A program made the translations under genes and the position numbers. Below are positions 27,027 through 60,384 of a DNA stretch of 64,000 bases, piece after piece (position 1 is the first letter of the stretch; every line of letters starts with the position of its first letter). The notes below the pieces were generated by a model that searched no databases, was not told where the DNA came from, and worked only from the letters and a program-made list of their open reading frames with translations. The DNA lies in the IMG/VR virus record IMGVR_UViG_3300027770_000025, positions 62,001-126,000 of that record. One strand, 5' to 3'.

Positions 27027-27899
27027 ATGGATAAGATAAAAAGTTTTAAAGAGTTTACTCTTAACGAAAAAGGAAGTGCATTAGGTTTTCTAGGTGGTAT
27101 TCTAACTGGGAATATTGACATCTTCGATAAACCAGATCAATGGTCCGGTATAGGATCACCAATAACCGGCGATGGGGATCTGCCCAATTCTAACACCGTG
27201 GCATCTGGTCCAAATACCATAGGAGCATTAGCACCAGGTTCTTATACACCATCAGGAACTTATACAGCAACACCAGGTAATGATGACTTTGCTCTTTATA
27301 TGCAGCACCAACAAGGCATAGCAGGAGCAGCGGGTCTAGTTAAAGCACTTAACGGAACTGGTAATATGCATCCAGAAACAGTTAAAACTAAAAGCGGAAC
27401 TAGATACGCAAACCTAGTTAAGAACGTACCTTCTGATAGACCACAAGTTAAGAGAGATATTATAGCATCATTAGACAAAGGAGACCAAAAAACTGCAGCA
27501 GGACTATTCCTTAATATGTGGAAAGAGAAATGGTTTTCTAAGCAAAAGCAGGCTAAGACCGCTATCAACCTTCCCAAAAATGCTACGGTAAAAGATGCTA
27601 TCACTAAAGCATCTTCCAAATACAGTGTGCCCTTTGATTTTGCTATTACTGTTGCTATTATAGAATCAGGTTTAAATCCAGCTGCACACGGAGCAACATA
27701 CAAAGGTCTATATGCAATGAAACCCAGTAGCAACTACAGCGGATTGGTTACTCCTATGGGAAACAATTGGGCAGATCCCTATGTTAATGCAGAAAATGGT
27801 ATTAAGTTATTAAAAAATAACATTGCTCAATTCAAGAAAAGTTTAGGTAACGATTGGGCTTCTCTTAAAGTTGGAAGTTGGGCAAACAACTTAGCTTAA
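27027..27899 (+). CDS. CTS-like-tagged protein with C-terminal lytic transglycosylase (SLT-like) domain
   Basis: MDKIKSFKEFTLNE; ASSKYSVP..AIIESGLNPAA..GLYAM..DPYVNA. Confidence 0.75.
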   Translation: MDKIKSFKEFTLNEKGSALGFLGGILTGNIDIFDKPDQWSGIGSPITGDGDLPNSNTVASGPNTIGALAPGSYTPSGTYTATPGNDDFALYMQHQQGIAGAAGLVKALNGTGNMHPETVKTKSGTRYANLVKNVPSDRPQVKRDIIASLDKGDQKTAAGLFLNMWKEKWFSKQKQAKTAINLPKNATVKDAITKASSKYSVPFDFAITVAIIESGLNPAAHGATYKGLYAMKPSSNYSGLVTPMGNNWADPYVNAENGIKLLKNNIAQFKKSLGNDWASLKVGSWANNLA

Positions 27900-37419: not shown

Positions 37420-37667
37420 ATGAGACATATAAAACCATATCAGATATTCGAAGCCAGTGCAGCTGCACTTCAGGAACTTACACAAGAGCAGATCGGGTGG
37501 TTGGATAAATGTGCAGCTGGCAGATGGAAGCTTAATCCACTACAAGACTTATTGATGTGGATGGTGATTTCGATTGCTCGTCCAAAAGTCTAACAGATCT
37601 TAAAGGGATTAAGTTCGGGGATGCGAGTGTGATTTTGGAAACCAGGTCCAGGCGCGTAGGTGACTAG
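37420..37667 (+). pseudogene. Frameshifted, array-less remnant of the LRR family
   Basis: MRHIKPYQIFEASAAALQELTQEQIGWLDKC..W.LNP, then 1-nt frameshift near 37539; LIDVDGDFDC..LTDLKGIKFG continues in another frame; LRR array absent. Confidence 0.8.
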
Positions 37668-37716
37668 GACCACAAAAAAAGCCTGGAGGTCTCCAGGCTG
37701 TAATGATTCTTCTATA

Positions 37717-43095: not shown

Positions 43096-43407
43096 TTAGA
43101 GTAGTCTTGAAGCTATCCTGTCCATGGCTTGGGCTAGCTCGTGATCCTTATCTGTGACCACATCTCCTGCGTCATGAGTTCTGAGCCAGCACTCCACCTC
43201 CTTATAGATGTTGGTCCATTTGGGATGGTGATCCATTTGGTTGCACACCTCTGCTACTTCGTTCATAAACTCCATGGCAACATTGAAATCTGCAAAAACG
43301 TATTTCTTGTACAGCGAGTTGTCGGCAGTAACCCACCCTTCTGTTTGAGTGATTGGCTTTAGTGTCTCCTGGATCTCAAACCCTCTATATTGCTGCAAGT
43401 GTCTCAT
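43096..43407 (-). CDS. phhB: Pterin-4a-carbinolamine dehydratase
   Basis: F.DF..AMEFMNEVA....QMDHHP.W.N.Y..V...L.THDAG.VT.KD..LA. Confidence 0.9.
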   Translation of the reverse strand: MRHLQQYRGFEIQETLKPITQTEGWVTADNSLYKKYVFADFNVAMEFMNEVAEVCNQMDHHPKWTNIYKEVECWLRTHDAGDVVTDKDHELAQAMDRIASRLL

Positions 43408-43523
43408 ACCGTTTGGGTGTATGTGTAGGTTTTTTTGAAATCAAACTTTAATATATACTAAAAACTAAATAAAAACTTACATATACACCTTGTTATGTGT
43501 TAGTAAAAAATAACTAACTAATT

Positions 43524-44000
43524 ATGAAATACCTAAAATTATTCGAAAATTTTATTTTGAATGAACTGACATCTTATCAACAAGCACCTGTCGAAGTAAA
43601 AGAATTTGCCGAGGGATTAAAATCACATTTAGAAGTAAATGGTTGCAGTGTTTTTGATGTTAAAGGACTATCTTTAGACGATGAAAGAAATCTAGTCTTT
43701 GATGAAAGACCCAAAGGAAAAAATATTATCTTTTCATTGAGTAATGAATTCAGTAACAAATACTTACCTGATGATGATTGTTTGAATGTTTATTACGAAA
43801 AGGGTAACGTTCAAGTAATTTCTTTGATTGTGGATTATTTGAAGGATTTTAATGAAAAAATAGGTAAAGCTACAAATGCTTCTGAAAGAACTGAAGGCTA
43901 TCGAAACGCGATGATAAATGATTATCTTATTTGGGATTTACTTGTCAAAAAAAGTGAAAAGCTTGTGAAGAACTACTCTGTTAAGTTCGTGGGTCGTTAA
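43524..44000 (+). CDS. CTS-like-tagged hypothetical protein
   Basis: MKYLKLFENFILNE. Confidence 0.7.
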   Translation: MKYLKLFENFILNELTSYQQAPVEVKEFAEGLKSHLEVNGCSVFDVKGLSLDDERNLVFDERPKGKNIIFSLSNEFSNKYLPDDDCLNVYYEKGNVQVISLIVDYLKDFNEKIGKATNASERTEGYRNAMINDYLIWDLLVKKSEKLVKNYSVKFVGR

Positions 44001-44173
44001 TTATTTTTTTATTACACATAACACTATATATCCTCTATTAGTTGCTCTATCTATAAGAGACGGAACATTATCTGCATCTATTTGGAGACCGGGCCTGGTT
44101 GTGGTAAAAGGCCGAAAAGGCCAGTTTTGAAATGCGATATATATAATAATTAAAATAATAAGAACAACCCAAT

Positions 44174-44647
44174 ATGAAAAAAGAAAAACTAAACGAATCA
44201 GCAGAAGCAGGTGCTATGTTTATTTCGCTACACCCTGATGACTATCACGGAGCGCCAGAGGTTGACACCGTATTTCCCTCTAGTATTCCTGGGGGGTTTT
44301 CCGGTGATGTGTTTCCGACAATTCCTAGCAAAGAAGAGGTTTTTAATGATTGGTTAGCAGCAGGATATAACGCTTTTGATACGGGCTGGGACGGTGATTT
44401 TGATAACCCGCATGAGGTAGAAGAGGGACAGAAGGAGACTTTTGAACTTTATGGCGATATGCCCCTTTATTATGCGACCTATATGATAGTTATGAATGAT
44501 GAACTAAATCCGCAAGAAATAATTGAGAATATAAATTATGATATACAGGAGGAATCTTATAATGGGAATAAGCTCGATCCTGATGATTTTGTTAAGCTTC
44601 TTAACGGTATACAGGGCATTATTGCTGCATATGTATTAACTAGATAA
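44174..44647 (+). CDS. Acidic late protein
   Basis: MKKEKLNES; GATATATA at 44136. Confidence 0.7.
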   Translation: MKKEKLNESAEAGAMFISLHPDDYHGAPEVDTVFPSSIPGGFSGDVFPTIPSKEEVFNDWLAAGYNAFDTGWDGDFDNPHEVEEGQKETFELYGDMPLYYATYMIVMNDELNPQEIIENINYDIQEESYNGNKLDPDDFVKLLNGIQGIIAAYVLTR

Positions 44648-44667
44648 TTATATAAATCTTAAATTTA

Positions 44668-45486
44668 ATGGAAAAAAAATTAAAATCTTTAGTTTTTAGA
44701 AATAAAACAGGAAGAAGGAGTCCATGGACTTGCAATTTTTATATTGGGTGTTCTAACTCATGCACATACTGCTGCTGTACGTATATTGTTAAACATTCAT
44801 GGTCATCTAGCGTTAAACTCATAAAGCACTTTATCAACGAATCGCATGCATTAGAGATTTTTGAAGAGGAGATAAAAGACAACCTAGCTTCATTACAGGA
44901 AAGGGGAAGACTTTTCTTCTCATTAACAACCGACGCAATGCTTCCCGAGACAAAAGAACTGACGTTTTCCGCTATGAGAATTTGTCATGATAATAATATT
45001 CCCTTTAAGGTTTTAACTAAATGTACAGATTGGGTAAATGGGGAATTCGTAAAAGAATTTGAGAATTCCGGAACAGTATGGGGTTTAGAACCTAAAATGG
45101 AACTTTTTGCTTTTGGCTTCTCCCTTACAGGTCATGATGAAATAGAGATTGGTGCAGGAACGAATGAGGATAGGGTAAAATCCCTTATTAAATTGAAAAA
45201 CCTCGGATTTAGAACGTTTATTAGTTTTGAACCTGTAATAGATTATGAATCCACTTTTTCAATAATGGAAAAATCCTATATGTACTGTGACTTCATGAGA
45301 ATAGGACTAATGAACGGGCCAACACGTGACAAGAATATAGATCGGGTAAAACTTCGTGGCTTCTTTGATCGTGTGAACGCTATGGTTAAATACGTTCCAG
45401 TTTATTGGGGGGATAGCATAATAACATATTTAGAAATAGATAGAGAAAATATGCCACAAAATTGTGTTATTGAAGAGATTTTCTAA
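44668..45486 (+). CDS. Radical SAM protein
   Basis: GCSNSCTYC (CxxxCxxC), LTK, SFEP. Confidence 0.8.
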   Translation: MEKKLKSLVFRNKTGRRSPWTCNFYIGCSNSCTYCCCTYIVKHSWSSSVKLIKHFINESHALEIFEEEIKDNLASLQERGRLFFSLTTDAMLPETKELTFSAMRICHDNNIPFKVLTKCTDWVNGEFVKEFENSGTVWGLEPKMELFAFGFSLTGHDEIEIGAGTNEDRVKSLIKLKNLGFRTFISFEPVIDYESTFSIMEKSYMYCDFMRIGLMNGPTRDKNIDRVKLRGFFDRVNAMVKYVPVYWGDSIITYLEIDRENMPQNCVIEEIF

Positions 45487-45489
45487 ATC

Positions 45490-46035
45490 GTGCATAGGGA
45501 TCTAATATTAGAACACGCAAAGAGATGGAGATCTATTGGGATCGATACTGTTTCTATTAAAGTTGAGGGAGAGCACAGATCAAAGAAGCTATACAGAAAA
45601 ACACTAAAGATAAGTGATGAAATATTGAATTCGCCTGATATGCTTTCCGAAGATTTTAATTTTCTTGGCATCTCACTCAGAAATTCAGGTATTTTTTGTC
45701 TTGATATAGAGGCGATTAATAATTCAGTTGATAATTTCTATTCTCTCCTGGCAGAAAGAGAAATAGATCCCAATTCTTTTTTAATGGAAACGAGCCTAAA
45801 TGGTGGACTTCATGCTTATTTCAGAACGGATGATTTGATAATAGAGAATAAACACTTTAATTTTCTGCATGGAATTCATTTTGATATATTAACCAGATTT
45901 AGAGTATTTACCTCGCCTTCAACCTTTAGCGGTAAGAAGTATGAATGGATAGGTACACATTTTGATCGCATCTCATCATTGAATCAGATTCCGAAATTTC
46001 CAGAAGAACTTCACGATCTTATATGTGATATATAA
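45490..46035 (+). CDS. Bifunctional primase/polymerase (Prim-Pol) N-terminal-like domain
   Basis: FCLDIE, ETSLNGGLHAYF, PS....YEW. Confidence 0.65.
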   Translation: MHRDLILEHAKRWRSIGIDTVSIKVEGEHRSKKLYRKTLKISDEILNSPDMLSEDFNFLGISLRNSGIFCLDIEAINNSVDNFYSLLAEREIDPNSFLMETSLNGGLHAYFRTDDLIIENKHFNFLHGIHFDILTRFRVFTSPSTFSGKKYEWIGTHFDRISSLNQIPKFPEELHDLICDI

Positions 46036-46061
46036 AGATGAAATAAAATACATTTAATTCA

Positions 46062-46304
46062 ATGAAAAATCTGATAAATTTTAAAAAATTTAGCTTAAAT
46101 GAGTCCGATCAAATCGAGAAATCTATTAATAACATTTCAGATTCTGCTCTTGATATTATTATAGATAAATGCGAGAGTGACGCACTTTTAGCTATAAAAG
46201 AAAATGTTCCTTATCTATATCAGGTGCTTTCAAAAAGATCACAATCTAGAGGAATAGACATTGATAAAATGGTTTCAGCAAAAGCTAAAATGAAATGGAT
46301 CTAG
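46062..46304 (+). CDS. Small CTS-like-tagged protein
   Basis: MKNLINFKKFSLNE. Confidence 0.7.
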   Translation: MKNLINFKKFSLNESDQIEKSINNISDSALDIIIDKCESDALLAIKENVPYLYQVLSKRSQSRGIDIDKMVSAKAKMKWI

Positions 46305-46390
46305 AATAGAGCACAAAGTTAATCAAAGCAGACATAAGTCTGCTTTTTTTGTGGTTTTATTTTTTTATCCCGTATAATTGACTTATCTTT

Positions 46391-46960
46391 ATGAAAAATT
46401 TAAAACTCAAAATAATGGAAAAATTAGATGGAATAAAAAAAGAAATGATTGATAGGCTTGGTCAAATATCTCCTATGCTTAGACGTGGAGATGAAAGAAG
46501 TAAAAAAATAGCAGGCATTGCAACACATTTGCATGCTTTGTCCTATATGGAGACAGGGGCAAGAAGAACCCGTTTACTTGAGGAGATATCTGATATCTAC
46601 AATGAAATGCAGGTAAAGTATAATCGTGAAATATACGAAGGATCAGGGGGAAAAATCGGATCAGGTAAAATGGTTGCTGCCACAGAAAAAGATCCAATAC
46701 ATGACATTGCAATAAAGAAAATATCAGGTATTGATGTAAATGGATTTAACACAATACAAATAAATATGGCTTTAATGCAGGACCCTATGTCCAGAATAGT
46801 ATTAGGGCAGTTTTACGGTGACGATAAAGCAGCAGACGAATTCTTTAATTTCGTATACCGATCTTTATGGACTTTGCTTCTTTGTTGCTACAGCAACAAG
46901 AGCTACGCAGAAAAAATAGAAAAGATTGTGTGCAAGTTTCCAGCACCTAGTTTAAACTAG
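46391..46960 (+). CDS. Hypothetical protein under an early-type promoter (true start probably 46415)
   Basis: ttttatttttttatcccg-N10-ttatcttta at 46356-46391. Confidence 0.65.
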   Translation: MKNLKLKIMEKLDGIKKEMIDRLGQISPMLRRGDERSKKIAGIATHLHALSYMETGARRTRLLEEISDIYNEMQVKYNREIYEGSGGKIGSGKMVAATEKDPIHDIAIKKISGIDVNGFNTIQINMALMQDPMSRIVLGQFYGDDKAADEFFNFVYRSLWTLLLCCYSNKSYAEKIEKIVCKFPAPSLN

Positions 46961-47022
46961 ATTTATGGTAATGTTACAAAAAAGCAGGAAATCACCTGCT
47001 TTTTTATGGATATATAATGGAC

Positions 47023-47472
47023 ATGAAGAATCTAAAGACCTATAGAATGTTTGAGAGTGTGATGGAGATGACTCAGTGGCGATTACTACAAACTTTCGAA
47101 GCATTTTCACCTTCTTTTCCAAAAAACAAACACATGAATTCTTTCTTCGGGCGGGAAGAATATAAAATAAAATTATTGACTACTATAGATGGAATTAAAG
47201 TTTATCTAATTAATTCTTCCATCTTAAGTCAAAAATTTCACGTGTGGAACACATATTTAGGTAGTCATCATTATGGTAAAAAAAGTTCTCATATTCCAGA
47301 GGATGAAATTTTTATATCTGATAAAACTCCCGAGAATGAAATTAAAAGAGTAATACTGCATGAGTATGTAGAAAGAGCTATAATGAAAGTTTTAGAAACA
47401 CAATATAATATGTCACCTGAACAAGCATGGGAAATAGCTCATTATTTTGTTAAGAATGATTTAGGTTTATAA
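47023..47472 (+). CDS. CTS-like-tagged protein, possible metal-binding HExxE motif
   Basis: MKNLKTYRMFESVME identical to next gene; ILHEYVE...AH. Confidence 0.7.
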   Translation: MKNLKTYRMFESVMEMTQWRLLQTFEAFSPSFPKNKHMNSFFGREEYKIKLLTTIDGIKVYLINSSILSQKFHVWNTYLGSHHYGKKSSHIPEDEIFISDKTPENEIKRVILHEYVERAIMKVLETQYNMSPEQAWEIAHYFVKNDLGL

Positions 47473-47489
47473 GGTAACCATATAAGAAG

Positions 47490-48548
47490 ATGAAGAATTT
47501 AAAGACCTATAGAATGTTTGAGAGTGTGATGGAGCCGACCCAGGAGCAGATCGGGTGGCTCGACAAATGTGTATATGGAAGCTGGAAGCTTAACACTTCT
47601 ACAGGGCTTGTAGATGTTGATGGGAATTTCAATTGTAACGAACAGGGTCTGACGGATCTTAAAGGTGTTAGATTCGGAGAAGTGAGCGAGGATTTCGATT
47701 GTGAAGACAATCGTCTCACCTCACTTGATGGAGCACCACAAGAGGTTAAAGGGAGTTTCAATTGTAATAGTAATCAGCTCACAAGTCTGGAGGGAGCACC
47801 TCAGGCTGTTAATGGGAGTTTCGATTGCCAGAATAATCAGCTCACAAGTCTGGTGGGAGCACCCCAGAAAGTTGGTGGGGCTTTCAGTTGTTATCGCAAT
47901 CGGCTCACCTCACTCGAGGGAGCACCTCAGACCGTTGGCGGGAGTTTCTATTGTAACGGCAATCAGCTCACAAGTCTTGAGGGAGCACCTCAGAGTGTTG
48001 ATGGTGATTTCGATTGTAGGAGCAATCAGCTCACCACCCTGGTGGGAGCAACTAAGACAGTTGGCAAGCATTTCATTTGTAGTCATAATCAGCTCACAAG
48101 TCTGGTGGGGGCACCTCAGAAAGTTGATGGGGATTTCACTTGTAAGAACAATGCTCTAACCTCACTGGTGGGAGCACCACAGACTGTTAATGAGTTTTTC
48201 AATTGTAGTGAGAATCAGCTCACAAGTCTTGAGGGAGCACCTCAGACCGTTGGTGGAAGTTTCTATTGTATAGATAATCAGCTCACAAGTCTTGAGGGAG
48301 CACCTCAGAAAGTTGGTGGTATTTTCCACTGTGAGGATAATCCAGTTACTGAGAAGACACTTAAAGAAATATTAGATTATATGGGAATGCGTAGATCCTA
48401 TCTAGATGTTGTTAAATCCCGATGGTACCTATTTCCCTTGGAGGATCAGGTGCTGTTATACAGACCTGATTTCGAGTGGATTGGAGCAGAAGAGAGAAGG
48501 AAGTTGGATGCTATGAAAACTTATACCAATATTAAAGGAATGATATAA
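47490..48548 (+). CDS. 22-aa LRR protein 2 (10 repeats), CTS-like tag
   Basis: Repeat pattern as in 42203. Confidence 0.9.
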   Translation: MKNLKTYRMFESVMEPTQEQIGWLDKCVYGSWKLNTSTGLVDVDGNFNCNEQGLTDLKGVRFGEVSEDFDCEDNRLTSLDGAPQEVKGSFNCNSNQLTSLEGAPQAVNGSFDCQNNQLTSLVGAPQKVGGAFSCYRNRLTSLEGAPQTVGGSFYCNGNQLTSLEGAPQSVDGDFDCRSNQLTTLVGATKTVGKHFICSHNQLTSLVGAPQKVDGDFTCKNNALTSLVGAPQTVNEFFNCSENQLTSLEGAPQTVGGSFYCIDNQLTSLEGAPQKVGGIFHCEDNPVTEKTLKEILDYMGMRRSYLDVVKSRWYLFPLEDQVLLYRPDFEWIGAEERRKLDAMKTYTNIKGMI

Positions 48549-48581
48549 TGATATATAAGACAATAAAAAAAACATAATAAA

Positions 48582-49262
48582 ATGAAAAACCTAAAAACGA
48601 TTACTATTTTCCTGTTTGCCACCTTATTAATAGCTGGGTGCTCAGACAGCGTACAAAAAGTGCAAACTGCCCAAGAGAACGAGGCTAAAGCCCTTAAAAT
48701 TCACGAAGGTGCTTTTGCTTTCTGTGGAGCATCTGCTGCAGTGCCTACAGGCAATAAGATCATTATTCAAGGCGTGGAGTTCGATGAAGGATGTGCTATC
48801 TGTCCAGTTCTAACAGGACCTTCCATCTCTAATCTAGACATGTATGGCAGTGGAGGTACTTGGGGAGATTTCGCAGTGGCGTCCAACTTTCAAACACCAG
48901 ACGGAACAGATAAAACAATCTGGAGCCTATTCTGGTACTTTGACACCACTACCACTATTCCTCAGTTCAACCCTGAAAGCAAGAAGTGGGAGTTATCTTC
49001 CCCAGTGAACAGATCATTTACAATTAACCTGGATTCACCAGCAACATCTGAGAGCAACATGTTTGCTATGCCTGGTGTGGTTTTTGATACCACTGAATCT
49101 GGAATTATCTTAGCTAAAGTTTATGGACCACTTAATGAAGCAGCAATTCCTTTGCGTAAAGCAGTAGCTGTTAAGAACGGGGAGACTTCAATAACTGCAG
49201 CAAAAGAAGGATTTCCCTACCCAGTAGGTACCCCAATCCCGACGATGCCAAAGAAAAAGTAA
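48582..49262 (+). CDS. Lipoprotein
   Basis: Signal peptide ending LLIAGC; GATATATA upstream. Confidence 0.75.
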   Translation: MKNLKTITIFLFATLLIAGCSDSVQKVQTAQENEAKALKIHEGAFAFCGASAAVPTGNKIIIQGVEFDEGCAICPVLTGPSISNLDMYGSGGTWGDFAVASNFQTPDGTDKTIWSLFWYFDTTTTIPQFNPESKKWELSSPVNRSFTINLDSPATSESNMFAMPGVVFDTTESGIILAKVYGPLNEAAIPLRKAVAVKNGETSITAAKEGFPYPVGTPIPTMPKKK

Positions 49263-49323
49263 ACACCACCAACATTAAATTAAAGCAGACAATTGTCTGC
49301 TTTTTTTGTGGATATATAAAATC

Positions 49324-50205
49324 ATGAAGCACGTTACCTCATACAACCTATTTGAATCAGAATCAGAACCAATCAGAAAGGTGTTCACCAGAGAGCAGCT
49401 TAGCTGGCTAGATAAATGCACAGAGAACTCCTGGAAATACAATCCATCTACAGGGCTTGTTGATGTGGATGGGGATTTCTATTGTAGCGGCCAGAATCTA
49501 CAAGATTTTAAAGGTGTCAGATTCGGGACAGTTGGAAGGGGTTTCAGTTGTAAGAATAATCAGCTCACCACACTGGAGGGAGCACCTCAGAGTGTTGGTG
49601 GGGATTTCAATTGTTATAATAATCAGCTCACCACACTGGAGGGAGCACCTCAGAGTGTTGGCAATAGTTTCAATTGTGATGACAATCAGCTCACCACACT
49701 AGTGGGAGCACCTCAGAGCGTTGGTGGGGGTTTCAGTTGTAAGAATAATCAGCTCACAAGTCTAATGGGAGCACCTCAGAGTGTTGGTGAGGATTTCGAT
49801 TGTGAGAATAATCAGCTCACGAGTCTTGAGGGAGCACCTCAGGCTGTTAATGGGCGTTTCAGTTGTAGGGATAATGAGCTCACCACACTAGTGGGAGCAC
49901 CTCAGAAAGTTAATGGGGCTTTCAGTTGTGTTGGCAATCAGCTCACGAGTCTGGTGGGAGCACCTCAAACGGTTGGTGAGATTTTCTATTGTGGTGGTAA
50001 TCCAGTCTCTGAATCAACTTTAAAAGTCATCTTTGCGCTAATTCGAAAAGGAATTGCTTATCAGCAGGCTCTAGAACAATACTGGCCGGAGATGGAAGAT
50101 GAAGATAGGGCGTTAATGTATAAACAAATGCCTAATCTACCACCAGAAGAAACAAGAAAATACAAGGCGTTGGCTAACTACAATAACATAAAGGGTTATT
50201 TATAA
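49324..50205 (+). CDS. 22-aa LRR protein 3 (7 repeats), CTS-like tag (start revised)
   Basis: MKHVTSYNLFE; repeats. Confidence 0.9.
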   Translation: MKHVTSYNLFESESEPIRKVFTREQLSWLDKCTENSWKYNPSTGLVDVDGDFYCSGQNLQDFKGVRFGTVGRGFSCKNNQLTTLEGAPQSVGGDFNCYNNQLTTLEGAPQSVGNSFNCDDNQLTTLVGAPQSVGGGFSCKNNQLTSLMGAPQSVGEDFDCENNQLTSLEGAPQAVNGRFSCRDNELTTLVGAPQKVNGAFSCVGNQLTSLVGAPQTVGEIFYCGGNPVSESTLKVIFALIRKGIAYQQALEQYWPEMEDEDRALMYKQMPNLPPEETRKYKALANYNNIKGYL

Positions 50206-50960
50206 TGAAGTACATTAAGCCATATCAGATATTCGAAGCCAATGCGGCAGCACCAGCAGCACTTACTGAGGAGCAGATCGAGTGGTTGGATAAATGTGCT
50301 AATCGAACATGGTCACTAAATCCACAGACTGGACTGGTTGATGTGGATTTGGATTTCAATTGTACCGGACAGGGACTTTCAGATTTTAAAGGAGTTAAGT
50401 TCGGGGTGGTTAATAGAAGTTTCTTTTGTCCCCGCAATTCCCTTACTTCCCTTATAGGAGCACCACAACGGGTTGGCGGGGATTTATATTGTAACGAAAA
50501 TGCACTCACCTCACTTGAGGGAGCACCACAACGGGTTGGAATGAGCTTAAATTGTAACAACAATTCACTCACCTCACTTATGGGAGCACCACGAGAGGTT
50601 GGCGGGAGTTTCTATTGTCACACCAATCTTCTAACCTCATTAGAGGGAGCACCCCAACGGGTTGGTGGGGATTTCACTTGTACTAACAATCTTCTCACCT
50701 CACTTGAGGGAGCACCAAAAAGTGTTTTCAGGGATTTCGGTTGTCATGGCAATCCAGTCTCAGAAAAAACATTAAAGAAGATATATGACAAAATGCAAAA
50801 GGGTACCAGTTATCTGGCTGCTGTGGAGAGTCTTTGGAGCGAGATTCCTCAGGACGATCAGGTTCTGCTTTATGCTGATGATTTCAAATGGGTAAGCCCA
50901 GAGCAGGGTAGAGGACTAGTAGCACTAAGGGCTTATCAGGCTCTAAGAGGCATGCTTTAG
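50205..50960 (+). CDS. 22-aa LRR protein 4 (5 repeats), CTS-like tag
   Basis: MKYIKPYQIFEA; repeats. Confidence 0.9.
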   Translation: MKYIKPYQIFEANAAAPAALTEEQIEWLDKCANRTWSLNPQTGLVDVDLDFNCTGQGLSDFKGVKFGVVNRSFFCPRNSLTSLIGAPQRVGGDLYCNENALTSLEGAPQRVGMSLNCNNNSLTSLMGAPREVGGSFYCHTNLLTSLEGAPQRVGGDFTCTNNLLTSLEGAPKSVFRDFGCHGNPVSEKTLKKIYDKMQKGTSYLAAVESLWSEIPQDDQVLLYADDFKWVSPEQGRGLVALRAYQALRGML

Positions 50961-50975
50961 CGGATATATAGAGTT

Positions 50976-52496
50976 ATGAAAAGAATAAAAAGTTTTAATG
51001 ATTTTATTAATAGTAATGTTAACGAAGGTGTTTTTAGTAAAATAGCTAGGAGCTTTACCGGAGCCGATAGAAAAGAAATAAATGCTCAGGTAAAGCTATT
51101 AAGAGACACTTACGAGGGATTAAATGACGGAGAAAAGAAAGAATTTTCCGATAGACTACAGCAAAAAATAGATAAAAATAATCAAGGAGGCTCGAGCATA
51201 GCTATTAGGTTACGTGAGAAATTTAAAACCATACTCGATTCGGGGGATTGGTATTCAGAACTAGGAAAAATATCTTCGGATGATGCCGAATATCTAATTA
51301 TGTATATTAGCTCTCTCTATCAATACATAATTAGAGAATATGATAATATAAAAGAAGTAGTTCAAAAAAATAAACTAACTAAAGAGTTAGAAAAATATAA
51401 TGAAGATGTCGCTAAATATAACAAAATTTCTTCATTTATAAAAGATGATTTTGAATCAAAAAAAGAAGAGTTTAATAAATTCTTTAGTTGTATCGACGGG
51501 AGTCCTAATTTTAAGAACAGAGACACATATGCTTTTATAGATAAATTTAATGCTTCTGATAGAAACAAAAAAATATTAGAAACAGACATATTTAAGAGAT
51601 TTAAGGCTTATACTATTGAGTTAAATCAGAAATTAAAAAGCTTTGAATGGAACTCGGGAGAATTTGTAAATACCATTGAACTTTATGACAAAGTCCAAAG
51701 TAGATACGAAGAACTCTTCAATAAGTCACAGGGTATGTCTATAAGACCAGATAAACCCAACTTTCAAATTTCGGGATGGGGTATGGACTTATTAACATGG
51801 GCTGAGGAGAATCTGAAAGATAAAACAATATCAGAGATGGCATTGGATATGACAATGAATAATTTGGATTATGCGAATGGAATGAAATGTGTTGAAATAG
51901 GAACCGAAGATACTAAAGTGGCCATAAAAAATGAAGATGGATTAATTGGTGGAAATATTGTTTATTCTGGGCAAAACTTTAATAATCTTAATTTAGAAAA
52001 TGTATCAGACCTTATCAATAAAGAAGGAGGATATAAGGAAAGTGTTTCGGGAAAAGTTATGTATGTAACTAATAATATACCATATGCTTTCTACTATTGC
52101 TATTTGAGATTTGGATTAGATGCTGATAGACCTAGCCCCAATTTATCTAGAAATTTATTTCCAACAGTTTATAAAATAACTCTAAAAAAAGGAACTAAAT
52201 TTTTTCATAAAAGTGATACCTATATAGATCAAGAAGAATATAAATTAGCTAGTATTTGTGGAATGTCTGGTTATCACTCGGGAAATGAAATAGTGAATGG
52301 CCAGAGTATTGAAGTGTCATTAATTACCAGCGATTGTATTGATACAATAGAGGCAATTAAACCAGGAGAGTTAATTTCATATTTAGAAAGTCCAGAATTT
52401 ACTAAAGATAATCAACTTATAAGTGGAGAAAGATATAAAATAGACCAGAACGAAATAAACTGGTATAAGGAATTAGTTTCACGGTATGGGATATGA
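50976..52496 (+). CDS. Large CTS-like-tagged protein; possible C-terminal ADP-ribosyltransferase-like fold
   Basis: MKRIKSFNDF..VNE; VYSG...MYVTNN..YAFYY...VYKITL...E. Confidence 0.55.
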   Translation: MKRIKSFNDFINSNVNEGVFSKIARSFTGADRKEINAQVKLLRDTYEGLNDGEKKEFSDRLQQKIDKNNQGGSSIAIRLREKFKTILDSGDWYSELGKISSDDAEYLIMYISSLYQYIIREYDNIKEVVQKNKLTKELEKYNEDVAKYNKISSFIKDDFESKKEEFNKFFSCIDGSPNFKNRDTYAFIDKFNASDRNKKILETDIFKRFKAYTIELNQKLKSFEWNSGEFVNTIELYDKVQSRYEELFNKSQGMSIRPDKPNFQISGWGMDLLTWAEENLKDKTISEMALDMTMNNLDYANGMKCVEIGTEDTKVAIKNEDGLIGGNIVYSGQNFNNLNLENVSDLINKEGGYKESVSGKVMYVTNNIPYAFYYCYLRFGLDADRPSPNLSRNLFPTVYKITLKKGTKFFHKSDTYIDQEEYKLASICGMSGYHSGNEIVNGQSIEVSLITSDCIDTIEAIKPGELISYLESPEFTKDNQLISGERYKIDQNEINWYKELVSRYGI

Positions 52497-52584
52497 TTTT
52501 AAGAAGATAAAGAATTTAAAGACCTTGACTAACCCAGCTTTGAATTTCAAAAAAATGATATATAGATAAAATCAATAGGCTAGT

Positions 52585-52911
52585 ATGAAACACATAAAAT
52601 TATTTGAAAACTACTTTGAATCTGATAATTCATCACCTGGGTTTATTAACGAATCTTTAGAAAAGAAGATTAGTAACGGTAAAATAACAGCTACGATAAA
52701 AAATAAATTAGGTCTTGAAGTTTCTTCAGGGAATTTTGTTTTGCAAATTGGTAGCGGTACAGGTCTTATTATAAAACATCCGGATTTTGATAAAAATAAA
52801 AAACAAATAAAAATTTCTATGGATGGTCCAGAGGGTTTTCGTGACATGTCAGGTATCCCAAATAAAGGTACCTGGTCAATTAATGGAACATATTTAACCC
52901 TCAAAGAATAA
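52585..52911 (+). CDS. CTS-like-tagged small protein
   Basis: MKHIKLFENY. Confidence 0.7.
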   Translation: MKHIKLFENYFESDNSSPGFINESLEKKISNGKITATIKNKLGLEVSSGNFVLQIGSGTGLIIKHPDFDKNKKQIKISMDGPEGFRDMSGIPNKGTWSINGTYLTLKE

Positions 52912-52956
52912 ATATAATGAATAAATGATCGACCTGCTTTTTTGTGGATATTTGAT

Positions 52957-53412
52957 TTATTTCTCGTCCAGAGGGTAGATGTCTTCGATCCAGCTAGGTA
53001 CTTCATCCAAAACCTCAATCTCATCAGAATACCCATATTTTCTATAATCCTTTAAGGGAAGCACAGAGTACTTTTCTTTTTTATCTTTAGTAAATTGTTT
53101 GTGTGCAAAATCTAGAACCAAATCATCAACCAGTATTGCTATGTGTGCATCTTTAGCCTTTTCTGTTTCTGGAAAGTAAACTATTCTAACAGGTGTTCTG
53201 TTATTTTCACACCATTGATAAAACTCCTGAACATACCAAGCACAGTTTCCTTTCTTCTTATCGAACTCTTTACCAACTCTTAGATCGTAGTTCTTTCCCA
53301 GATCTCTTAGAAATTGATCCGCAATATTTTCCACTCCTGGTTTGCTAACTCTAAAGCTGGTAGGAACCATTTGATTCTCGTAATCATCAAATGTTCTGAT
53401 AAATTTCATCAT
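52957..53412 (-). CDS. CTS-like-tagged protein with putative Cys-His-Asp (papain/transglutaminase-like) triad
   Basis: GNCAWY...AHIAIL...VLDF. Confidence 0.55.
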   Translation of the reverse strand: MMKFIRTFDDYENQMVPTSFRVSKPGVENIADQFLRDLGKNYDLRVGKEFDKKKGNCAWYVQEFYQWCENNRTPVRIVYFPETEKAKDAHIAILVDDLVLDFAHKQFTKDKKEKYSVLPLKDYRKYGYSDEIEVLDEVPSWIEDIYPLDEK

Positions 53413-58688: not shown

Positions 58689-58766
58689 TGGTGGTCCCTA
58701 CAGGGCTCGAACCTGTGACCCTCTGATTATGAGTCAGACGCTACTAACCAACTGAGCTAAGGGACC
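58689..58766 (-). tRNA. tRNA with CAT anticodon, likely tRNA-Ile2 (lysidine type); elongator Met not excluded
   Basis: GGTCCCT acceptor stem, TAGCTCAGTTGG D-arm, tctga-CT-CAT-AA-tcaga anticodon arm, GGTTCGAGCC T-arm, encoded CCA. Confidence 0.9.
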
Positions 58767-58950
58767 TTTGTTATTAATTATACTCAAATATAAGAAACCG
58801 TTTCTGTTTAAAAAAACTTTTTTCACAAAAAAGAAAACTTTTTTCCAATATATAGTGTTGGATAACTCGAATCCCACGAATTTTTTCCACTAAGGAGCTA
58901 AAACGTGAAAATATTTTCCACTATGGACGATTCAAATAGTAAAACAACTA

Positions 58951-59157
58951 ATGAAATTAAAGAGACTAAAAACAATAGCGCTCATACTGGCAACGTTTTT
59001 CAATCCCTTGGGATTCGATGCACTATTTGCGATAGTTACAAAGTGGACGGGTTCGTATTTAATCACAGACATCTTATTCTATATGGCTTCTGCTTCCTTC
59101 TTTGCACTATATTTCTTTCTTGGAAAAATTGAAAGGGAAAAAGAATTAGAAAAATAA
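58951..59157 (+). CDS. Small membrane protein
   Basis: FFNPLGFDALF; hydrophobic. Confidence 0.65.
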   Translation: MKLKRLKTIALILATFFNPLGFDALFAIVTKWTGSYLITDILFYMASASFFALYFFLGKIEREKELEK

Positions 59158-59161
59158 GATT

Positions 59162-59347
59162 CTAATCTATATCTCCGCTTAGCAGAAAAAATAAGCAATC
59201 TTTCAAATACTCATCTTCGAGTTCATCGAAAACTTCTCTGGGTGCCTTATTGGCTACCAATTCAAATACTTTATGTACAGCTTCTTCACCATATGTTTCT
59301 GAAGCCTCTGCCACTGTCCGTGCCTTTATTACTGTTGTTTTTATCAT
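59162..59347 (-). CDS. Small hypothetical protein
   Basis: ORF track. Confidence 0.5.
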   Translation of the reverse strand: MIKTTVIKARTVAEASETYGEEAVHKVFELVANKAPREVFDELEDEYLKDCLFFLLSGDID

Positions 59348-59386
59348 TTTTATCTAAATATTATTTATTAGAGATATATAACTACG

Positions 59387-59962
59387 ATGAAAAATCTTAA
59401 GCCATTTGCCATATTCGAGGCTTCTTCATATAGTTACACAATCGACGATGTAAAAAGGTTGCCGTTATTTGGGCTATTAGAAAAACTTGGTTTTTATGAT
59501 TCAACTACCGATAGAATATGGAAAAATAGTAATATGAGAATTTATAACGATCTTCTTTATATGAATGAACCTTCTGAATGTATAACTATCTATGGCAATG
59601 GTCCGGTTAGAAAAACTATTAAAGGTATGTTTGGTACCGGTGCACCCCATATACTAAAGAACTTCAATTCTAATATCTCTTCATTAACAGACTGGAATAT
59701 TAGATTTGCTTATCTCGTTAATTGGGCTAGAAAAAGATATGCTAAACAGGGATTAGCTTTTGATCTATCTAAAATTCCTAATATAGAAAGTTATTTAGAA
59801 TCTATCTATAAAGAAGATATTCCAATCTTTATGGGCATTTACAAAGATTTAGATCAAAGATCTAAAGAATTGTTTCTGAAAAAAATAGGGAAGACCGAGG
59901 ATGATCTAAATAAATTGGTTGCTCTTTATAATAAAGCCACTAACATTATGAAATGGACTTAA
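59387..59962 (+). CDS. CTS-like-tagged hypothetical protein
   Basis: MKNLKPFAIFE; GATATATA at ~59373. Confidence 0.7.
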   Translation: MKNLKPFAIFEASSYSYTIDDVKRLPLFGLLEKLGFYDSTTDRIWKNSNMRIYNDLLYMNEPSECITIYGNGPVRKTIKGMFGTGAPHILKNFNSNISSLTDWNIRFAYLVNWARKRYAKQGLAFDLSKIPNIESYLESIYKEDIPIFMGIYKDLDQRSKELFLKKIGKTEDDLNKLVALYNKATNIMKWT

Positions 59963-60384
59963 TCCATTCTTCTTAGGTCCCTTTCTACGTCTCTCTCCTT
60001 AATAGATTCCCTTTTGTCATAAAGCTTTTTACCTTTAGCTAAAGCTATTTCCATTTTTAGCCTATTCCTTTCGTCTACAAATATCTTAACCGGGATTATG
60101 GTTAACCCTTTGTCTAGTGAGGAGCTTAGTTTTTTTAACTCTTTCTTTCTGAGGAGAAGCTTCTTATCTCTAAGTGCTTCGTGCTGAAAGGATCCAGGAC
60201 CAGGAGTTATTCCCAGTCCTTTCACCCAAAGTTCCCCTTTATCGAAAATGCAATATGTGTCAACCATAGAAGCCTTACCGTCTTTGATCGCCTTTACCTC
60301 GGTGCCAAATAGGCATATCCCTGCGATATAGGTGTCGATGAAAGTGTATTCGAATCTGGCCTTACGATTAACTATCGATTTCAT
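59959..60384 (-). CDS. smpB: SsrA-binding protein SmpB
   Basis: NRKARFEY...AGI.L.GTEVKAI...KLLL...GLTIIP...AKGKKLYDKRE. Confidence 0.95.
   Translation of the reverse strand: MKSIVNRKARFEYTFIDTYIAGICLFGTEVKAIKDGKASMVDTYCIFDKGELWVKGLGITPGPGSFQHEALRDKKLLLRKKELKKLSSSLDKGLTIIPVKIFVDERNRLKMEIALAKGKKLYDKRESIKERDVERDLRRMD

What the first reader, a model, noticed from the sequence alone, without database searches (positions are those of the whole stretch)
47023..52525. Tag capture caught in the act: identical 15-codon leader on two adjacent unrelated genes
47023-47067 and 47490-47534 match at 44/45 nt (MKNLKTYRMFESVME) and then diverge completely. The first gene body is AT-rich and unrelated, as if inserted behind the LRR gene's promoter and tag with duplication of the leader. 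A third, dead copy (ATG changed to ATA; taagaagataaagaatttaaagacct) lies at 52500-52525 right after gene 50976. This suggests how new cargo is recruited, paralleling the repeat duplication in the early array.
Basis: partly seen in the sequence, partly recalled or inferred. Interest (0 to 1): 0.68.

Follow-up and report, generated by a model that had tools for sequence, protein, structure and literature searches.

The report
Gene cassette flanked by duplicated protein leader
In a 349-kb freshwater jumbo phage, a small foreign gene sits between two copies of its neighbour's 15-codon N-terminal leader, relatives without the insert exist, and the leader resembles the phage T4 signal that loads proteins into the capsid, so this shows how such phages may swap tagged genes.

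Summary
47023-47067 and 47490-47534 match 44/45 nt, and 52500-52525 matches the second copy 25/26 with ATG changed to ATA.

The leader MKNLKTYRMFESVME is native to the LRR family: 84 of the 120 best homologues carry it. Homologues of the 47023 body never carry it. Most are untagged 106-109 aa proteins. The closest one (94% nt) starts with its own leader-type N-terminus, MRLLQTFEAF. So the window gene has two leaders in tandem.

A 5-kb metagenome contig has the same terminator, promoter and a single leader running straight into the LRR body. That is the empty site, or a clean excision. Contigs of one lake sample break exactly at the leader ends.

The stub at 52500 is the right edge of a second mobile cassette, the 506-aa gene. 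In another lineage a live gene starting MINLKTYKKF sits at that position.

About 30-45 ORFs carry such leaders, mostly behind a late-type promoter motif, often ending in [LIV]NE. The capsid protein and the T4-type prohead protease also start with that motif. A T4-like capsid-targeting propeptide is the best reading of the tag, but it is unproven.

The closest precedent is the T-even internal proteins. I rate this a new variant of a known kind.

The parts
46984..47005 (+). Terminator hairpin (GCAGG-6 nt-CCTGC) with T-run, after the 189-aa gene
   Evidence: Inverted repeat I1, 11-nt arms, 100% complementary. Sequence read. The same sequence precedes the single leader in L028.
47008..47017 (+). 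GGATATATAA, a late-type promoter motif; the ATG follows 5 nt later
   Evidence: GATATATA[AG] precedes 45 ORFs of at least 60 aa, including the prohead protease ORF, tail sheath and a head-closure-like ORF. In L018 an LRR gene sits directly behind the same motif at the same spacing.
47023..47067 (+). Leader copy 1 (MKNLKTYRMFESVME), now fused to the foreign gene
   Evidence: 44/45 nt to copy 2. In run X8 a 2960-nt contig ends exactly at 47067.
47068..47472 (+). Foreign cassette ORF with its own ATG and its own leader-type N-terminus (MTQW-RLLQTFEAF), a disordered linker and a folded core of about 103 aa (residues 47-149 of the fusion)
   Evidence: 94.4% nt identity to L012/L013 over 47081-47488, while the neighbouring genes there are only 67-75% identical to other parts of this genome. 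Homologues and alignment A1. Model core pLDDT about 90. 29.4% GC.
47473..47489 (+). 3' flank carried with the cassette (GGTAACC...ATAAGAA); its end overlaps the short A/G-rich stretch before the LRR start codon
   Evidence: The same flank follows the homologue in L012-L015, in a different genomic context.
47490..47534 (+). Leader copy 2, on its native LRR gene
   Evidence: The N-terminus is shared by dozens of LRR homologues.
47490..48548 (+). LRR1, 352 aa, with 22-23-residue repeats (NQLTSLEGAPQ.V.G.F.C)
   Evidence: Pfam LRR_4, 31.7 bits against a cut-off of 27. 5823 homologues at E<=1e-10.
49324..50960 (+). LRR2 (49324-50205) and LRR3 (50205-50960), tandem paralogues with diverged leaders of the same type
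50976..52496 (+). 506-aa AT-rich gene with its own leader (MKRIKSFNDFINSNVNE): a second mobile cassette
   Evidence: 94.4% nt identity to L023-L026 over exactly 50976-52523. In those phages the flanks match this genome only at 65-71% and at a different place (259-261 kb).
52500..52525 (+). Dead leader stub: 7 nt of upstream sequence, ATA in place of ATG, and 16 nt of leader
   Evidence: 25/26 to 47483-47508. Conserved in L016. In L024 the same position holds the live start of a gene beginning MINLKTYKKF with a Pterin_4a domain.

Best explanation
The region is an insertion/excision difference bounded by two direct copies of a coding leader.

Shown. The resident gene is an LRR gene. Its family normally begins with MKNLKTYRMFESVME and sits directly behind a terminator plus a GGATATATAA late-type promoter. 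A 422-nt cassette (47068-47489) now lies between codon 15 of that leader and the base before the LRR start codon. It holds a small AT-rich gene with its own start codon, its own leader-type N-terminus, and 17 nt of 3' flank. The 45-nt leader is therefore present twice. The upstream copy, still behind the promoter, is fused in frame to the newcomer. The downstream copy keeps the LRR gene intact.

Inferred mechanism. The cassette came by recombination with a co-occurring related phage. That lineage carries the same gene at 94% nt identity in a backbone only about 70% identical, and it is found in the same lake samples. The 45-nt repeats can then recombine to remove the cassette cleanly, or to release a circle that could re-enter at any similar leader. 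This resembles the PeSL mini-circles of T4-type phages. The stub at 52500 marks the same kind of boundary at the right end of a second cassette: that cassette's homology with other lineages runs from its own ATG to nt 19 of the next gene's leader.

Inferred function of the leader. It is most likely a T4-like capsid-targeting propeptide. It would load the protein into the prohead, be cut off by the T4-type prohead protease at a [LIVM]-x-E site, and leave the protein to be packaged and probably injected.

My confidence is about 0.85 for the structure and history and about 0.5 for the function. The figure given is a compromise.
For: Direction of copying:
- 84 of the 120 best LRR homologues carry the leader (11 of them called from Met9), and 4 carry it exactly.
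- None of the 12 homologues of the 47023 body carries it, apart from the 99% identical strain variant.

Empty site:
- L028 has 92 nt matching 46931-47022 (the whole 146-nt alignment is 97% identical), then one leader, then the LRR body.
- In run X8 contigs break at 47067 and 47505. The per-contig depth figures are 110, 5.7 and 92 for left flank, insert and LRR. These are only a hint.

Foreign origin:
- 94.4% identity over 47081-47488 against 67-75% for backbone genes.
- The donor-type contigs L013 and L015 come from the same samples as L016 and as this genome.

Second cassette.

Plasticity at short homologies: L017 fuses LRR1 to LRR2 and deletes 50209-52913 at the shared sequence TATAATGAA.

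Function of the leader:
- Peptidase_S77 prohead protease and gp23-type capsid protein are present.
- [LIV]NE is 3.2-fold enriched at residues 6-25. It occurs in 30 of 414 ORFs, including the capsid protein (MKLINE), the protease (INE-9) and ORFs next to the capsid gene.
- 24 of 28 strict-motif leaders have [LIVM]xE at residues 8-25, against 136 of 386 other ORFs, p=1.6e-7.
- Leader genes sit behind the motif that also precedes the tail sheath and protease genes.
- The conserved positions use varied synonymous codons, so the constraint is on the protein.
- The T4 CTS is MKTYQEFIAE, with targeting residues 4 and 7 and processing residues 8 and 10 (PMC8442874, PMC9026906). Here the aromatics at positions 7 and 10 have the same spacing and are followed by E.
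- One tagged ORF has an SLT lytic transglycosylase domain.
Against: - No proteomic or experimental evidence that any tagged protein is in the virion or is cleaved.
- About 40 tagged genes is many for capsid cargo.
- The resemblance to the T4 CTS covers about 10 residues and cannot establish homology.
- L028 may be a secondary excision rather than the ancestral state. Its leader combines the copy-1 base at position 10 with the copy-2 base found in L016/L017 at position 36.
- The 12 nt ATGACTCAGTGG between the leader and the part shared with L012 have no identified source, so the true donor is not in hand.
- Depth figures of Logan contigs are per contig and may include relatives.
- The inserted gene did not need a new leader, so the fusion may be a neutral by-product.
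Confidence: 0.7

Rival explanations
1. Tandem duplication then body replacement. The LRR gene first duplicated in tandem, as LRR2/LRR3 did. The body of the upstream copy was then replaced by the foreign gene. The two leaders are therefore remnants of two LRR genes, not a duplication made at insertion.
For: Three LRR paralogues lie in tandem here. Recombination between LRR paralogues is seen in L017. After the leader the next three codons (x-T-Q) and a Trp codon faintly resemble the LRR sequence; the repeat is 50/54 over 54 nt.
Against: The extension beyond 45 nt is not significant. The empty-site contig L028 and the contig breaks in X8 would then all have to be secondary excisions. No trace of an LRR body or 3' end remains next to the insert.
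Confidence: 0.12
2. Gene conversion. Both neighbours always had their own leaders, and a short conversion tract copied the LRR leader over the neighbour's.
For: The neighbour's family does have leader-type N-termini in some members (P0002, P0007, P0011).
Against: The native leader (RLLQTFEAF) is still present downstream of the captured one, so the LRR leader was added, not substituted. In L016 and L017 the copies differ at 2 sites, so there is no continuing homogenisation. The closest homologue lies in a different genomic context, not next to an LRR gene.
Confidence: 0.04
3. The leader is not a capsid-loading signal. It is either a translation or transcription feature of near-leaderless late mRNAs, or a protein signal for something else, such as a chaperone, another assembly or turnover.
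For: Many tagged genes start only 3-5 nt after the promoter motif, so the first codons lie at the very 5' end of the transcript. The first codons are A-rich. Cargo status is untested, and about 40 cargo genes would be unusually many.
Against: The conserved positions (aromatic at 7 and 10, E at 8 and 11, [LIV]NE) are kept through varied synonymous codons. Tagged genes also occur 13-30 nt after the motif. The capsid protein, the protease and the capsid-gene neighbours share the [LIV]NE start, which ties the motif to head assembly.
Confidence: 0.3
4. Assembly artefact: the assembler duplicated a short repeat.
For: None beyond the presence of a repeat.
Against: Four independent assemblies share the structure with their own point differences. 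Single contigs in runs X2 and X6 run from the upstream gene through copy 1 into the insert, and others run from the insert through copy 2.
Confidence: 0.01

Closest known systems
Internal proteins (Ip1-3 and others) of T-even phages and their capsid targeting sequence
   Same: Unrelated protein bodies share only a 10-19-residue N-terminal leader. The leader directs them into the prohead and is removed by the gp21 prohead protease after L/I-x-E. The genes sit in variable hotspots and differ between related phages (PMC9026906, PMC3012670, PMC12373910, PMC8442874). Here too there is a T4-type protease, a shared leader on unrelated bodies, two aromatics three residues apart followed by a [LIVM]-x-E site, and variable loci.
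   Different: The phage is only distantly T4-like: its capsid protein is 43-44% identical to Lak and other Bacteroidota jumbo phages. The leader is longer and has a different sequence. There are tens of tagged genes rather than 3-10, including a large LRR family. Packaging and cleavage are untested. The direct repeat of the leader flanking an indel has, to my knowledge, not been described for Ip genes.
PeSL-mediated modular shuffling and PeSL mini-circles in T4-type phages (PMC2839356, PMC4122927)
   Same: Short repeated sequences at gene boundaries serve as exchange points for non-essential ORFs between related phages. Recombination between two direct copies can release a circle that carries the gene. 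This genome also has composite terminator-promoter units: stem-loop, T-run, GGATATATA.
   Different: The repeat that flanks this indel is coding sequence, the first 15 codons, not the terminator/promoter unit. The promoter motif is late-type rather than early sigma-70-like. Circles were not looked for.
SPN3US gp53/gp54: paralogues with identical 15-residue N-termini (PMC5694885)
   Same: Two neighbouring head proteins share an identical 15-residue N-terminus that contains protease motifs, while the rest has diverged. The authors compare this with T4 CTSs.
   Different: Those two proteins are paralogues (34% identity). Here the two bodies are unrelated and one is a recent import.

Membership tests
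T4-type capsid targeting sequence / internal-protein system | Phage encodes a gp21-type prohead protease and a gp23-type capsid protein | tested here: met
   Peptidase_S77 at 32.9 and 31.1 bits (cut-off 27) in ORF 302345-304309. Gp23 at 138-141 bits in ORF 300589-302319.
T4-type capsid targeting sequence / internal-protein system | A short N-terminal leader shared by otherwise unrelated proteins | tested here: met
   28 ORFs match a strict motif and about 45 a position-specific scoring matrix. Bodies include LRR, an SLT domain, a Pterin_4a-like domain (in L024) and many orphans.
T4-type capsid targeting sequence / internal-protein system | Leader ends at a prohead-protease site (hydrophobic-x-Glu) that structural head proteins also use | tested here: inconclusive
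   The sequence pattern is present and enriched: [LIV]NE 3.2-fold at residues 6-25, 24/28 against 136/386, and it also starts the capsid protein and the protease. Actual cleavage could not be tested.
T4-type capsid targeting sequence / internal-protein system | Proteins are packaged in the capsid and injected | not testable with these tools
   Needs virion proteomics. The only indirect support is the late-type promoter context.
T4-type capsid targeting sequence / internal-protein system | Sequence homology of the leader to the T4 CTS MKTYQEFIAE | tested here: inconclusive
   MK start, aromatic residues three apart and a following Glu are shared, judged by eye against the sequence printed in PMC8442874. 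Ten residues are too few for a statistical test.
PeSL cassette shuffling | The indel is bounded by repeated terminator/promoter units | tested here: not met
   The left side has a terminator plus promoter, but the repeat flanking the indel is the 45-nt coding leader. There is no promoter unit before copy 2.
Transposable element with target-site duplication | Terminal inverted repeats and a transposase or other mobility gene | tested here: not met
   No inverted repeats at the insert ends. The only ORF has no Pfam or PHROG match and only weak fold resemblance to IrrE/PprI-type zincin domains.
Leucine-rich repeat proteins | LRR profile match above the curated cut-off | tested here: met
   LRR_4, 31.7 bits against a cut-off of 27, for 47490-48548. 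PHROG 21719 and 7816 hits for all three paralogues.

The most novel reading that the evidence does not exclude
In this group of freshwater jumbo phages the capsid-loading leader also serves as a portable recombination site. Any ORF that begins with a leader and is followed by another leader can be cut out, circularised and dropped in frame behind any other leader. The set of packaged and injected proteins (dozens, including a large LRR arsenal) would then be reshuffled between co-infecting lineages, one gene at a time. The filled and empty forms at 47023-47534, and the cassette edges that fall at or inside leaders, would be live traces of this process.
Probability: 0.3. Interest if true: 0.75.

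Novelty: new variant of a known kind. Interest (0 to 1): 0.6.

Why it matters
T-even phages are thought to diversify their injected anti-defence proteins by placing new bodies behind a conserved capsid-targeting leader. How a body gets behind a leader has not been seen directly. Here the two states (one leader, or leader-insert-leader) coexist among near-identical genomes. The donor form is also known, and the cassette edges can be read to the base.

If the leader is a loading signal, three things follow:
- It gives a simple sequence rule to list candidate virion cargo in uncultivated jumbo phages of the Lak/PAU-like group. The rule is late promoter motif, MK.[IL]K.[FY]..[FY], then [LIV]NE.
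- It points to a large, fast-evolving LRR family as probable cargo.
- It suggests a tag that could be used to load proteins into such capsids.

If the leader is not a loading signal, the finding remains a clean natural example of repeat-bounded cassette exchange between phage lineages.

Tried and rejected
- Chance and misassembly are rejected.
- Transposon-like insertion is rejected: no terminal inverted repeats and no mobility gene.
- Homology of the two copies beyond nt 45 (x-T-Q and Trp codons) is not significant, with 1610 of 2000 shuffles scoring as high. Since the empty-site contig already has CCG at codon 16, I treat the repeat as 45 nt.
- GenBank phages hold nothing similar to the locus by DNA, or to the 47023 protein by tblastn.
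- The 189-aa upstream protein has no relative in IMG/VR by the pattern search.
- An exact-pattern scan of IMG/VR for the leader found nothing beyond the window's own record. The degenerate scan of metagenome contigs was the one that found the empty site.
- A source for the 12 nt ATGACTCAGTGG between the captured leader and the part shared with L012 was not found in any locus or in the genome.
- The function of the inserted gene was not resolved. There is no Pfam or PHROG match. Foldseek found nothing at E<=0.001. VIA-align's best match is PprI/IrrE at Z 5.9, which is in the noise range. The invariant H-E-x-x-E...H pattern hints at a small zincin-like domain, no more.
- Sigma-70-type promoters are not enriched in the region: 20 found against 22 expected.
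- L016 at first seemed to lack LRR3, judging by its gene table. Translation shows the gene is intact there and the gene caller missed it.
- No complex prediction was attempted, because the binding partner of the leader is unknown.
- The big representative-protein search was not needed.
Full report
**Setting.** The window is bases 62001-126000 of a 348,582-bp IMG/VR virus record with 36% GC. The genome has a gp23-type major capsid protein and a T4-type prohead protease, Peptidase_S77. The capsid protein is closest, at 43-44% aa, to Lak megaphages, an uncultured 462-kb phage, and jumbo phages of Tenacibaculum, Chryseobacterium, Flavobacterium and Sphingomonas. Nothing in GenBank phages resembles the locus itself. 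The stretch occurs in at least 14 freshwater metagenome runs from at least 11 studies.

**The observation.**
- 47023-47067 and 47490-47534 are identical at 44/45 nt, and the single difference is synonymous.
- These are the only two full copies in the genome.
- The repeat finder extends the pair to 54 nt at 93%, but the part beyond nt 45 is not significant.
- 52500-52525 matches 47483-47508 at 25/26, with ATG changed to ATA, 3 nt after the stop of the 506-aa gene.
- GC is 29% for the first body, 45% for the LRR gene and 30% for the 506-aa gene.
- The structure recurs in L016 (44-kb contig, 98.5% identical over 16 kb), in L017 (96.7%) and in the contig of P0001.
- In L016 and L017 the second copy has one extra synonymous change, so the copies evolve separately.

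**Whose leader is it?** The LRR family is very large: 5823 proteins at E<=1e-10. Of the 120 best hits, 73 start with the leader and 11 more are called from its Met9. Twenty-one have MKNLKTY[RKS]MFES and four have the exact 15 residues. Among these proteins the leader is more conserved than the next 11 residues, 55% against 23% pairwise identity. A few homologues carry a basic N-terminus instead, swapped at the same boundary. The leader is therefore native to the LRR gene.

**What is the first gene?** It has 12 homologues.
- Six are 106-109 aa and start just before the conserved core, for example MKPYKKQLLT. They have no leader. In IMG/VR loci L003, L005 and L007 these sit in unrelated contexts.
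- Three groups carry N-terminal extensions of the leader type: MRLLQTFEAF (P0002), MQLLSYDEFL (P0007, L006) and MELRKFIKTSIREYLNE (P0011).
- P0002 is the closest. Its DNA (L012-L015) is 94.4% identical to 47081-47488. That span runs from codon 2 of its native leader to 16 nt past the stop.
- The genes around it in those contigs match this genome only at 67-75%, and at 71-85 kb rather than here.
- In L012 the gene follows an 86-aa tagged gene behind an ATGGATATATAA motif and is not near an LRR gene.
- L013 comes from the same metagenome as L016, and L015 from the same metagenome as this genome, so the two lineages co-occur.

The window protein therefore has the LRR leader, then MTQW, then the native RLLQTFEAF leader, a linker and the core (alignment A1). 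The model shows a low-confidence helix at residues 4-28, a disordered linker at 29-43 and a well-folded core at 47-149. The core has invariant H82 H83, H90, H113 E114, E117 and H140. Structural matches are only weak, to IrrE/PprI-type domains. Its function is open.

**The empty site.** A degenerate scan of metagenome contigs for the 15-residue leader found four contigs.
- Two are this genome and L016.
- L028 (5.1 kb) has 92 nt matching 46931-47022 (the 146-nt alignment that runs on through the leader is 97% identical). These hold the end of the 189-aa gene, the hairpin, the T-run, GGATATATAA and TGGAC. One leader follows, and then directly CCGACCCAGGAGCAG..., the LRR body. Relative to L028 this genome has 467 extra bases: the insert plus one leader copy.
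- A distant relative (L018, LRR 50% identical) also has its LRR gene directly behind GATATATAG plus 5 nt.
- L028's leader has the copy-1 base at position 10 and, at position 36, the base that copy 2 has in L016/L017. That pattern fits a crossover between the two repeats, so L028 may be an excision product rather than the ancestor. I cannot decide between these.

Laying Logan contigs on 46600-47900 gave more detail.
- In run X8 a 2960-nt contig without any difference ends exactly at 47067. A separate contig covers 47038-47419. The next long one starts at 47505.
- The per-contig depth figures there are 110, 5.7 and 92. Contig depths are crude, so this is only a hint. It is what a population mostly lacking the insert would give.
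- In X2 and X6 single contigs run through copy 1 into the insert.
- In an RNA-library run (X16) a 365-nt contig bridges the insert's 3' end and the LRR gene. That fits co-transcription, but DNA carry-over is not excluded.

**The third copy.** The 506-aa gene has 93% aa / 94.4% nt homologues in four IMG/VR contigs (L023-L026). Their flanks match this genome only at 65-71%, and at 259-261 kb. The high identity spans exactly 50976-52523. It starts at the gene's own ATG and ends 19 nt into the stub. In L024 that position holds a live gene, ATG ATA AAT CTA AAG ACA TAT... = MINLKTYKKFQ..., followed by a Pterin_4a domain at residues 10-88. The stub is therefore the remains of the next gene's leader at the right edge of a second mobile cassette. 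In sequence it is closer to LRR1's copy 2 (25/26) than to L024 (about 20/26). The lost neighbour in this lineage was probably an LRR1-type gene.

**Other signs of recombination at short homologies.**
- L017 joins the 5' part of LRR1 to the 3' part of LRR2. It also deletes 50209-52913 at a shared TATAATGAA.
- An LRR paralogue at 37420 is frameshifted.
- In L027 the 23 nt around the LRR start codon also form the 3' end of an upstream HTH-like ORF.

**What the leader may be.**
- A strict motif (M[KRE].[ILVF]..[FY]..[FYWL]) marks 28 of 414 ORFs, and a position-specific scoring matrix marks about 45. Most lie at 67-134 kb, with some at 213-229 kb and beside the capsid gene.
- The motif GATATATA[AG] precedes 45 ORFs of at least 60 aa. 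Most of these have leader-type starts, often only 3-5 nt after the motif.
- The same motif precedes the protease ORF, the tail sheath gene and a head-closure-like gene, so it looks like the late promoter.
- [LIV]NE is 3.2-fold enriched at residues 6-25. It occurs in 30 ORFs, including the capsid protein (MKLINE), the protease (MPQLQSINE) and three ORFs next to the capsid gene.
- 24 of 28 strict leaders have [LIVM]xE at residues 8-25, against 136 of 386 other ORFs, p=1.6e-7.
- Conserved positions use mixed synonymous codons.

In T4 the internal proteins share a 10-19-residue CTS, MKTYQEFIAE. Targeting depends mainly on residues 4 and 7 and processing on residues 8 and 10. gp21 cuts after L/I-x-E and itself has LIE-9. 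The Ips share nothing but the leader and vary between phages (PMC8442874, PMC9026906, PMC3012670, PMC12373910). The present leader has aromatics three residues apart at positions 7 and 10, followed by Glu, and often a [LIV]NE a few residues on. I therefore read it as a T4-like capsid-targeting propeptide, with probability about 0.5. No tool here can test packaging or cleavage.

**Mechanism, shown and inferred.**
- Shown: the leader is LRR-native; the insert is foreign and recently exchanged between lineages; forms with and without it exist among near-identical genomes; the insert is bounded by 45-nt direct repeats; a second cassette ends inside a leader.
- Inferred: the insert entered in one of two ways. 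One is two staggered illegitimate joins, the right one in a short A/G-rich stretch (ATAAGAA) shared by the donor flank and the sequence before the LRR start codon. The other is Campbell-type integration of a circle that already carried a leader.
- Also inferred: excision occurs by recombination between the repeats, and leaders act as preferred exchange points.
- Unexplained: the 12 nt ATGACTCAGTGG at the left join have no known source.

**Comparison and verdict.** The closest known system is the T-even Ip/CTS system. PeSL shuffling (PMC2839356, PMC4122927) is the closest known exchange mechanism. The identical 15-residue N-termini of SPN3US gp53/gp54 (PMC5694885) are a related observation. The differences here are the distant phage lineage, the number and kinds of tagged genes, and the coding repeat that flanks a natural indel. 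I rate it a new variant of a known kind, with interest 0.6. The claim that this event recruited new cargo is weakened, because the imported gene already had a leader of its own.

Noticed in passing
genome-wide; in the window e.g. 47008-47017, 48550-48558, 49311-49319, 50963-50971, 52557-52565: GATATATA[AG] occurs 63 times and precedes 45 ORFs of at least 60 aa, including the protease, tail sheath and a head-closure-like gene. It is probably the late promoter. There are two spacing classes: ATG 3-6 nt after the motif (near-leaderless mRNAs) and 13-30 nt after it.
   Followed up: partly
window 46325-46346 and 49282-49303; also genome 104173 (window 42173): Near-identical stem-loops (AAAGCAGAC-4 nt-GTCTGCTTT) with a T-run. 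At two of the three sites (49282-49303 and genome 104173) GGATATATA follows directly; after 46325-46346 it does not. Those two are composite terminator-promoter units that recall the PeSLs of T4-type phages.
   Followed up: partly
L017 (1.66-kb metagenome contig) against window 46989-53394: A natural deletion variant. The LRR1 5' part is fused to the LRR2 3' part, which removes the lipoprotein gene. A second deletion removes 50209-52913 (LRR3, the 506-aa gene, the stub and the 108-aa gene) at the shared sequence TATAATGAA.
   Followed up: yes
L027:3100-3200 (ENA contig NODE_11399, 4 kb): An LRR1-type gene, 97% identical over its first 270 nt. Its start region AAGAAGATGAAGAATTTAAAGAC is also the 3' end of an upstream 52-aa HTH-like ORF (...NFYKWLKEDEEFKDL*). 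This is either a recombination joint at a 23-nt shared sequence or an assembly chimera.
   Followed up: no
window 37420-37700 (+): An LRR paralogue with a leader (MRHIKPYQIFEAS...LTQEQIGWLDKC) is frameshifted after about codon 40. It is probably a pseudogene, and it lies behind a GATATATAG motif.
   Followed up: partly
window 27027-27899 (+): A leader-bearing 290-aa ORF (MDKIKSFKEFTLNE...) has an SLT lytic transglycosylase domain at residues 191-272. Phages often carry this kind of enzyme in the particle.
   Followed up: partly
window about 43100-46100 and 58689-60300: Auxiliary genes close to the locus: Pterin_4a, radical SAM, a weak Prim-Pol hit, tRNA-Met (58689-58766, minus strand), and an SmpB-like ORF seen in the gene table of L016. 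ARAGORN found no tmRNA in the window.
   Followed up: no
proteins P0035, P0070, P0077 (LRR homologues): Some LRR homologues have a basic N-terminus (MKTKKQNPPKGG) where the leader would be, joined at the same boundary just before LTEEQIEWL. The leader therefore behaves as an exchangeable module in the family.
   Followed up: no
L003:6634-8010 (130-kb IMG/VR contig): A different phage group holds the untagged homologue of the 47023 body. There, many ORFs start with another recurrent N-terminus, MIKL.DIL.E, including an LRR-like protein. This may be a second leader type.
   Followed up: no
genome 302345-304309 (minus strand), outside the window: The prohead protease domain (residues 29-144) is the N-terminal part of a 654-aa ORF with a long tail that matches no characterised protein family. 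It may be a protease-scaffold fusion. The capsid protein has about 96 residues before its gp23 domain.
   Followed up: no
window 47437-47801, run X16: A contig from a metatranscriptome library spans the end of the inserted gene and the start of the LRR gene. This is consistent with one transcript, but DNA in the library cannot be excluded.
   Followed up: no
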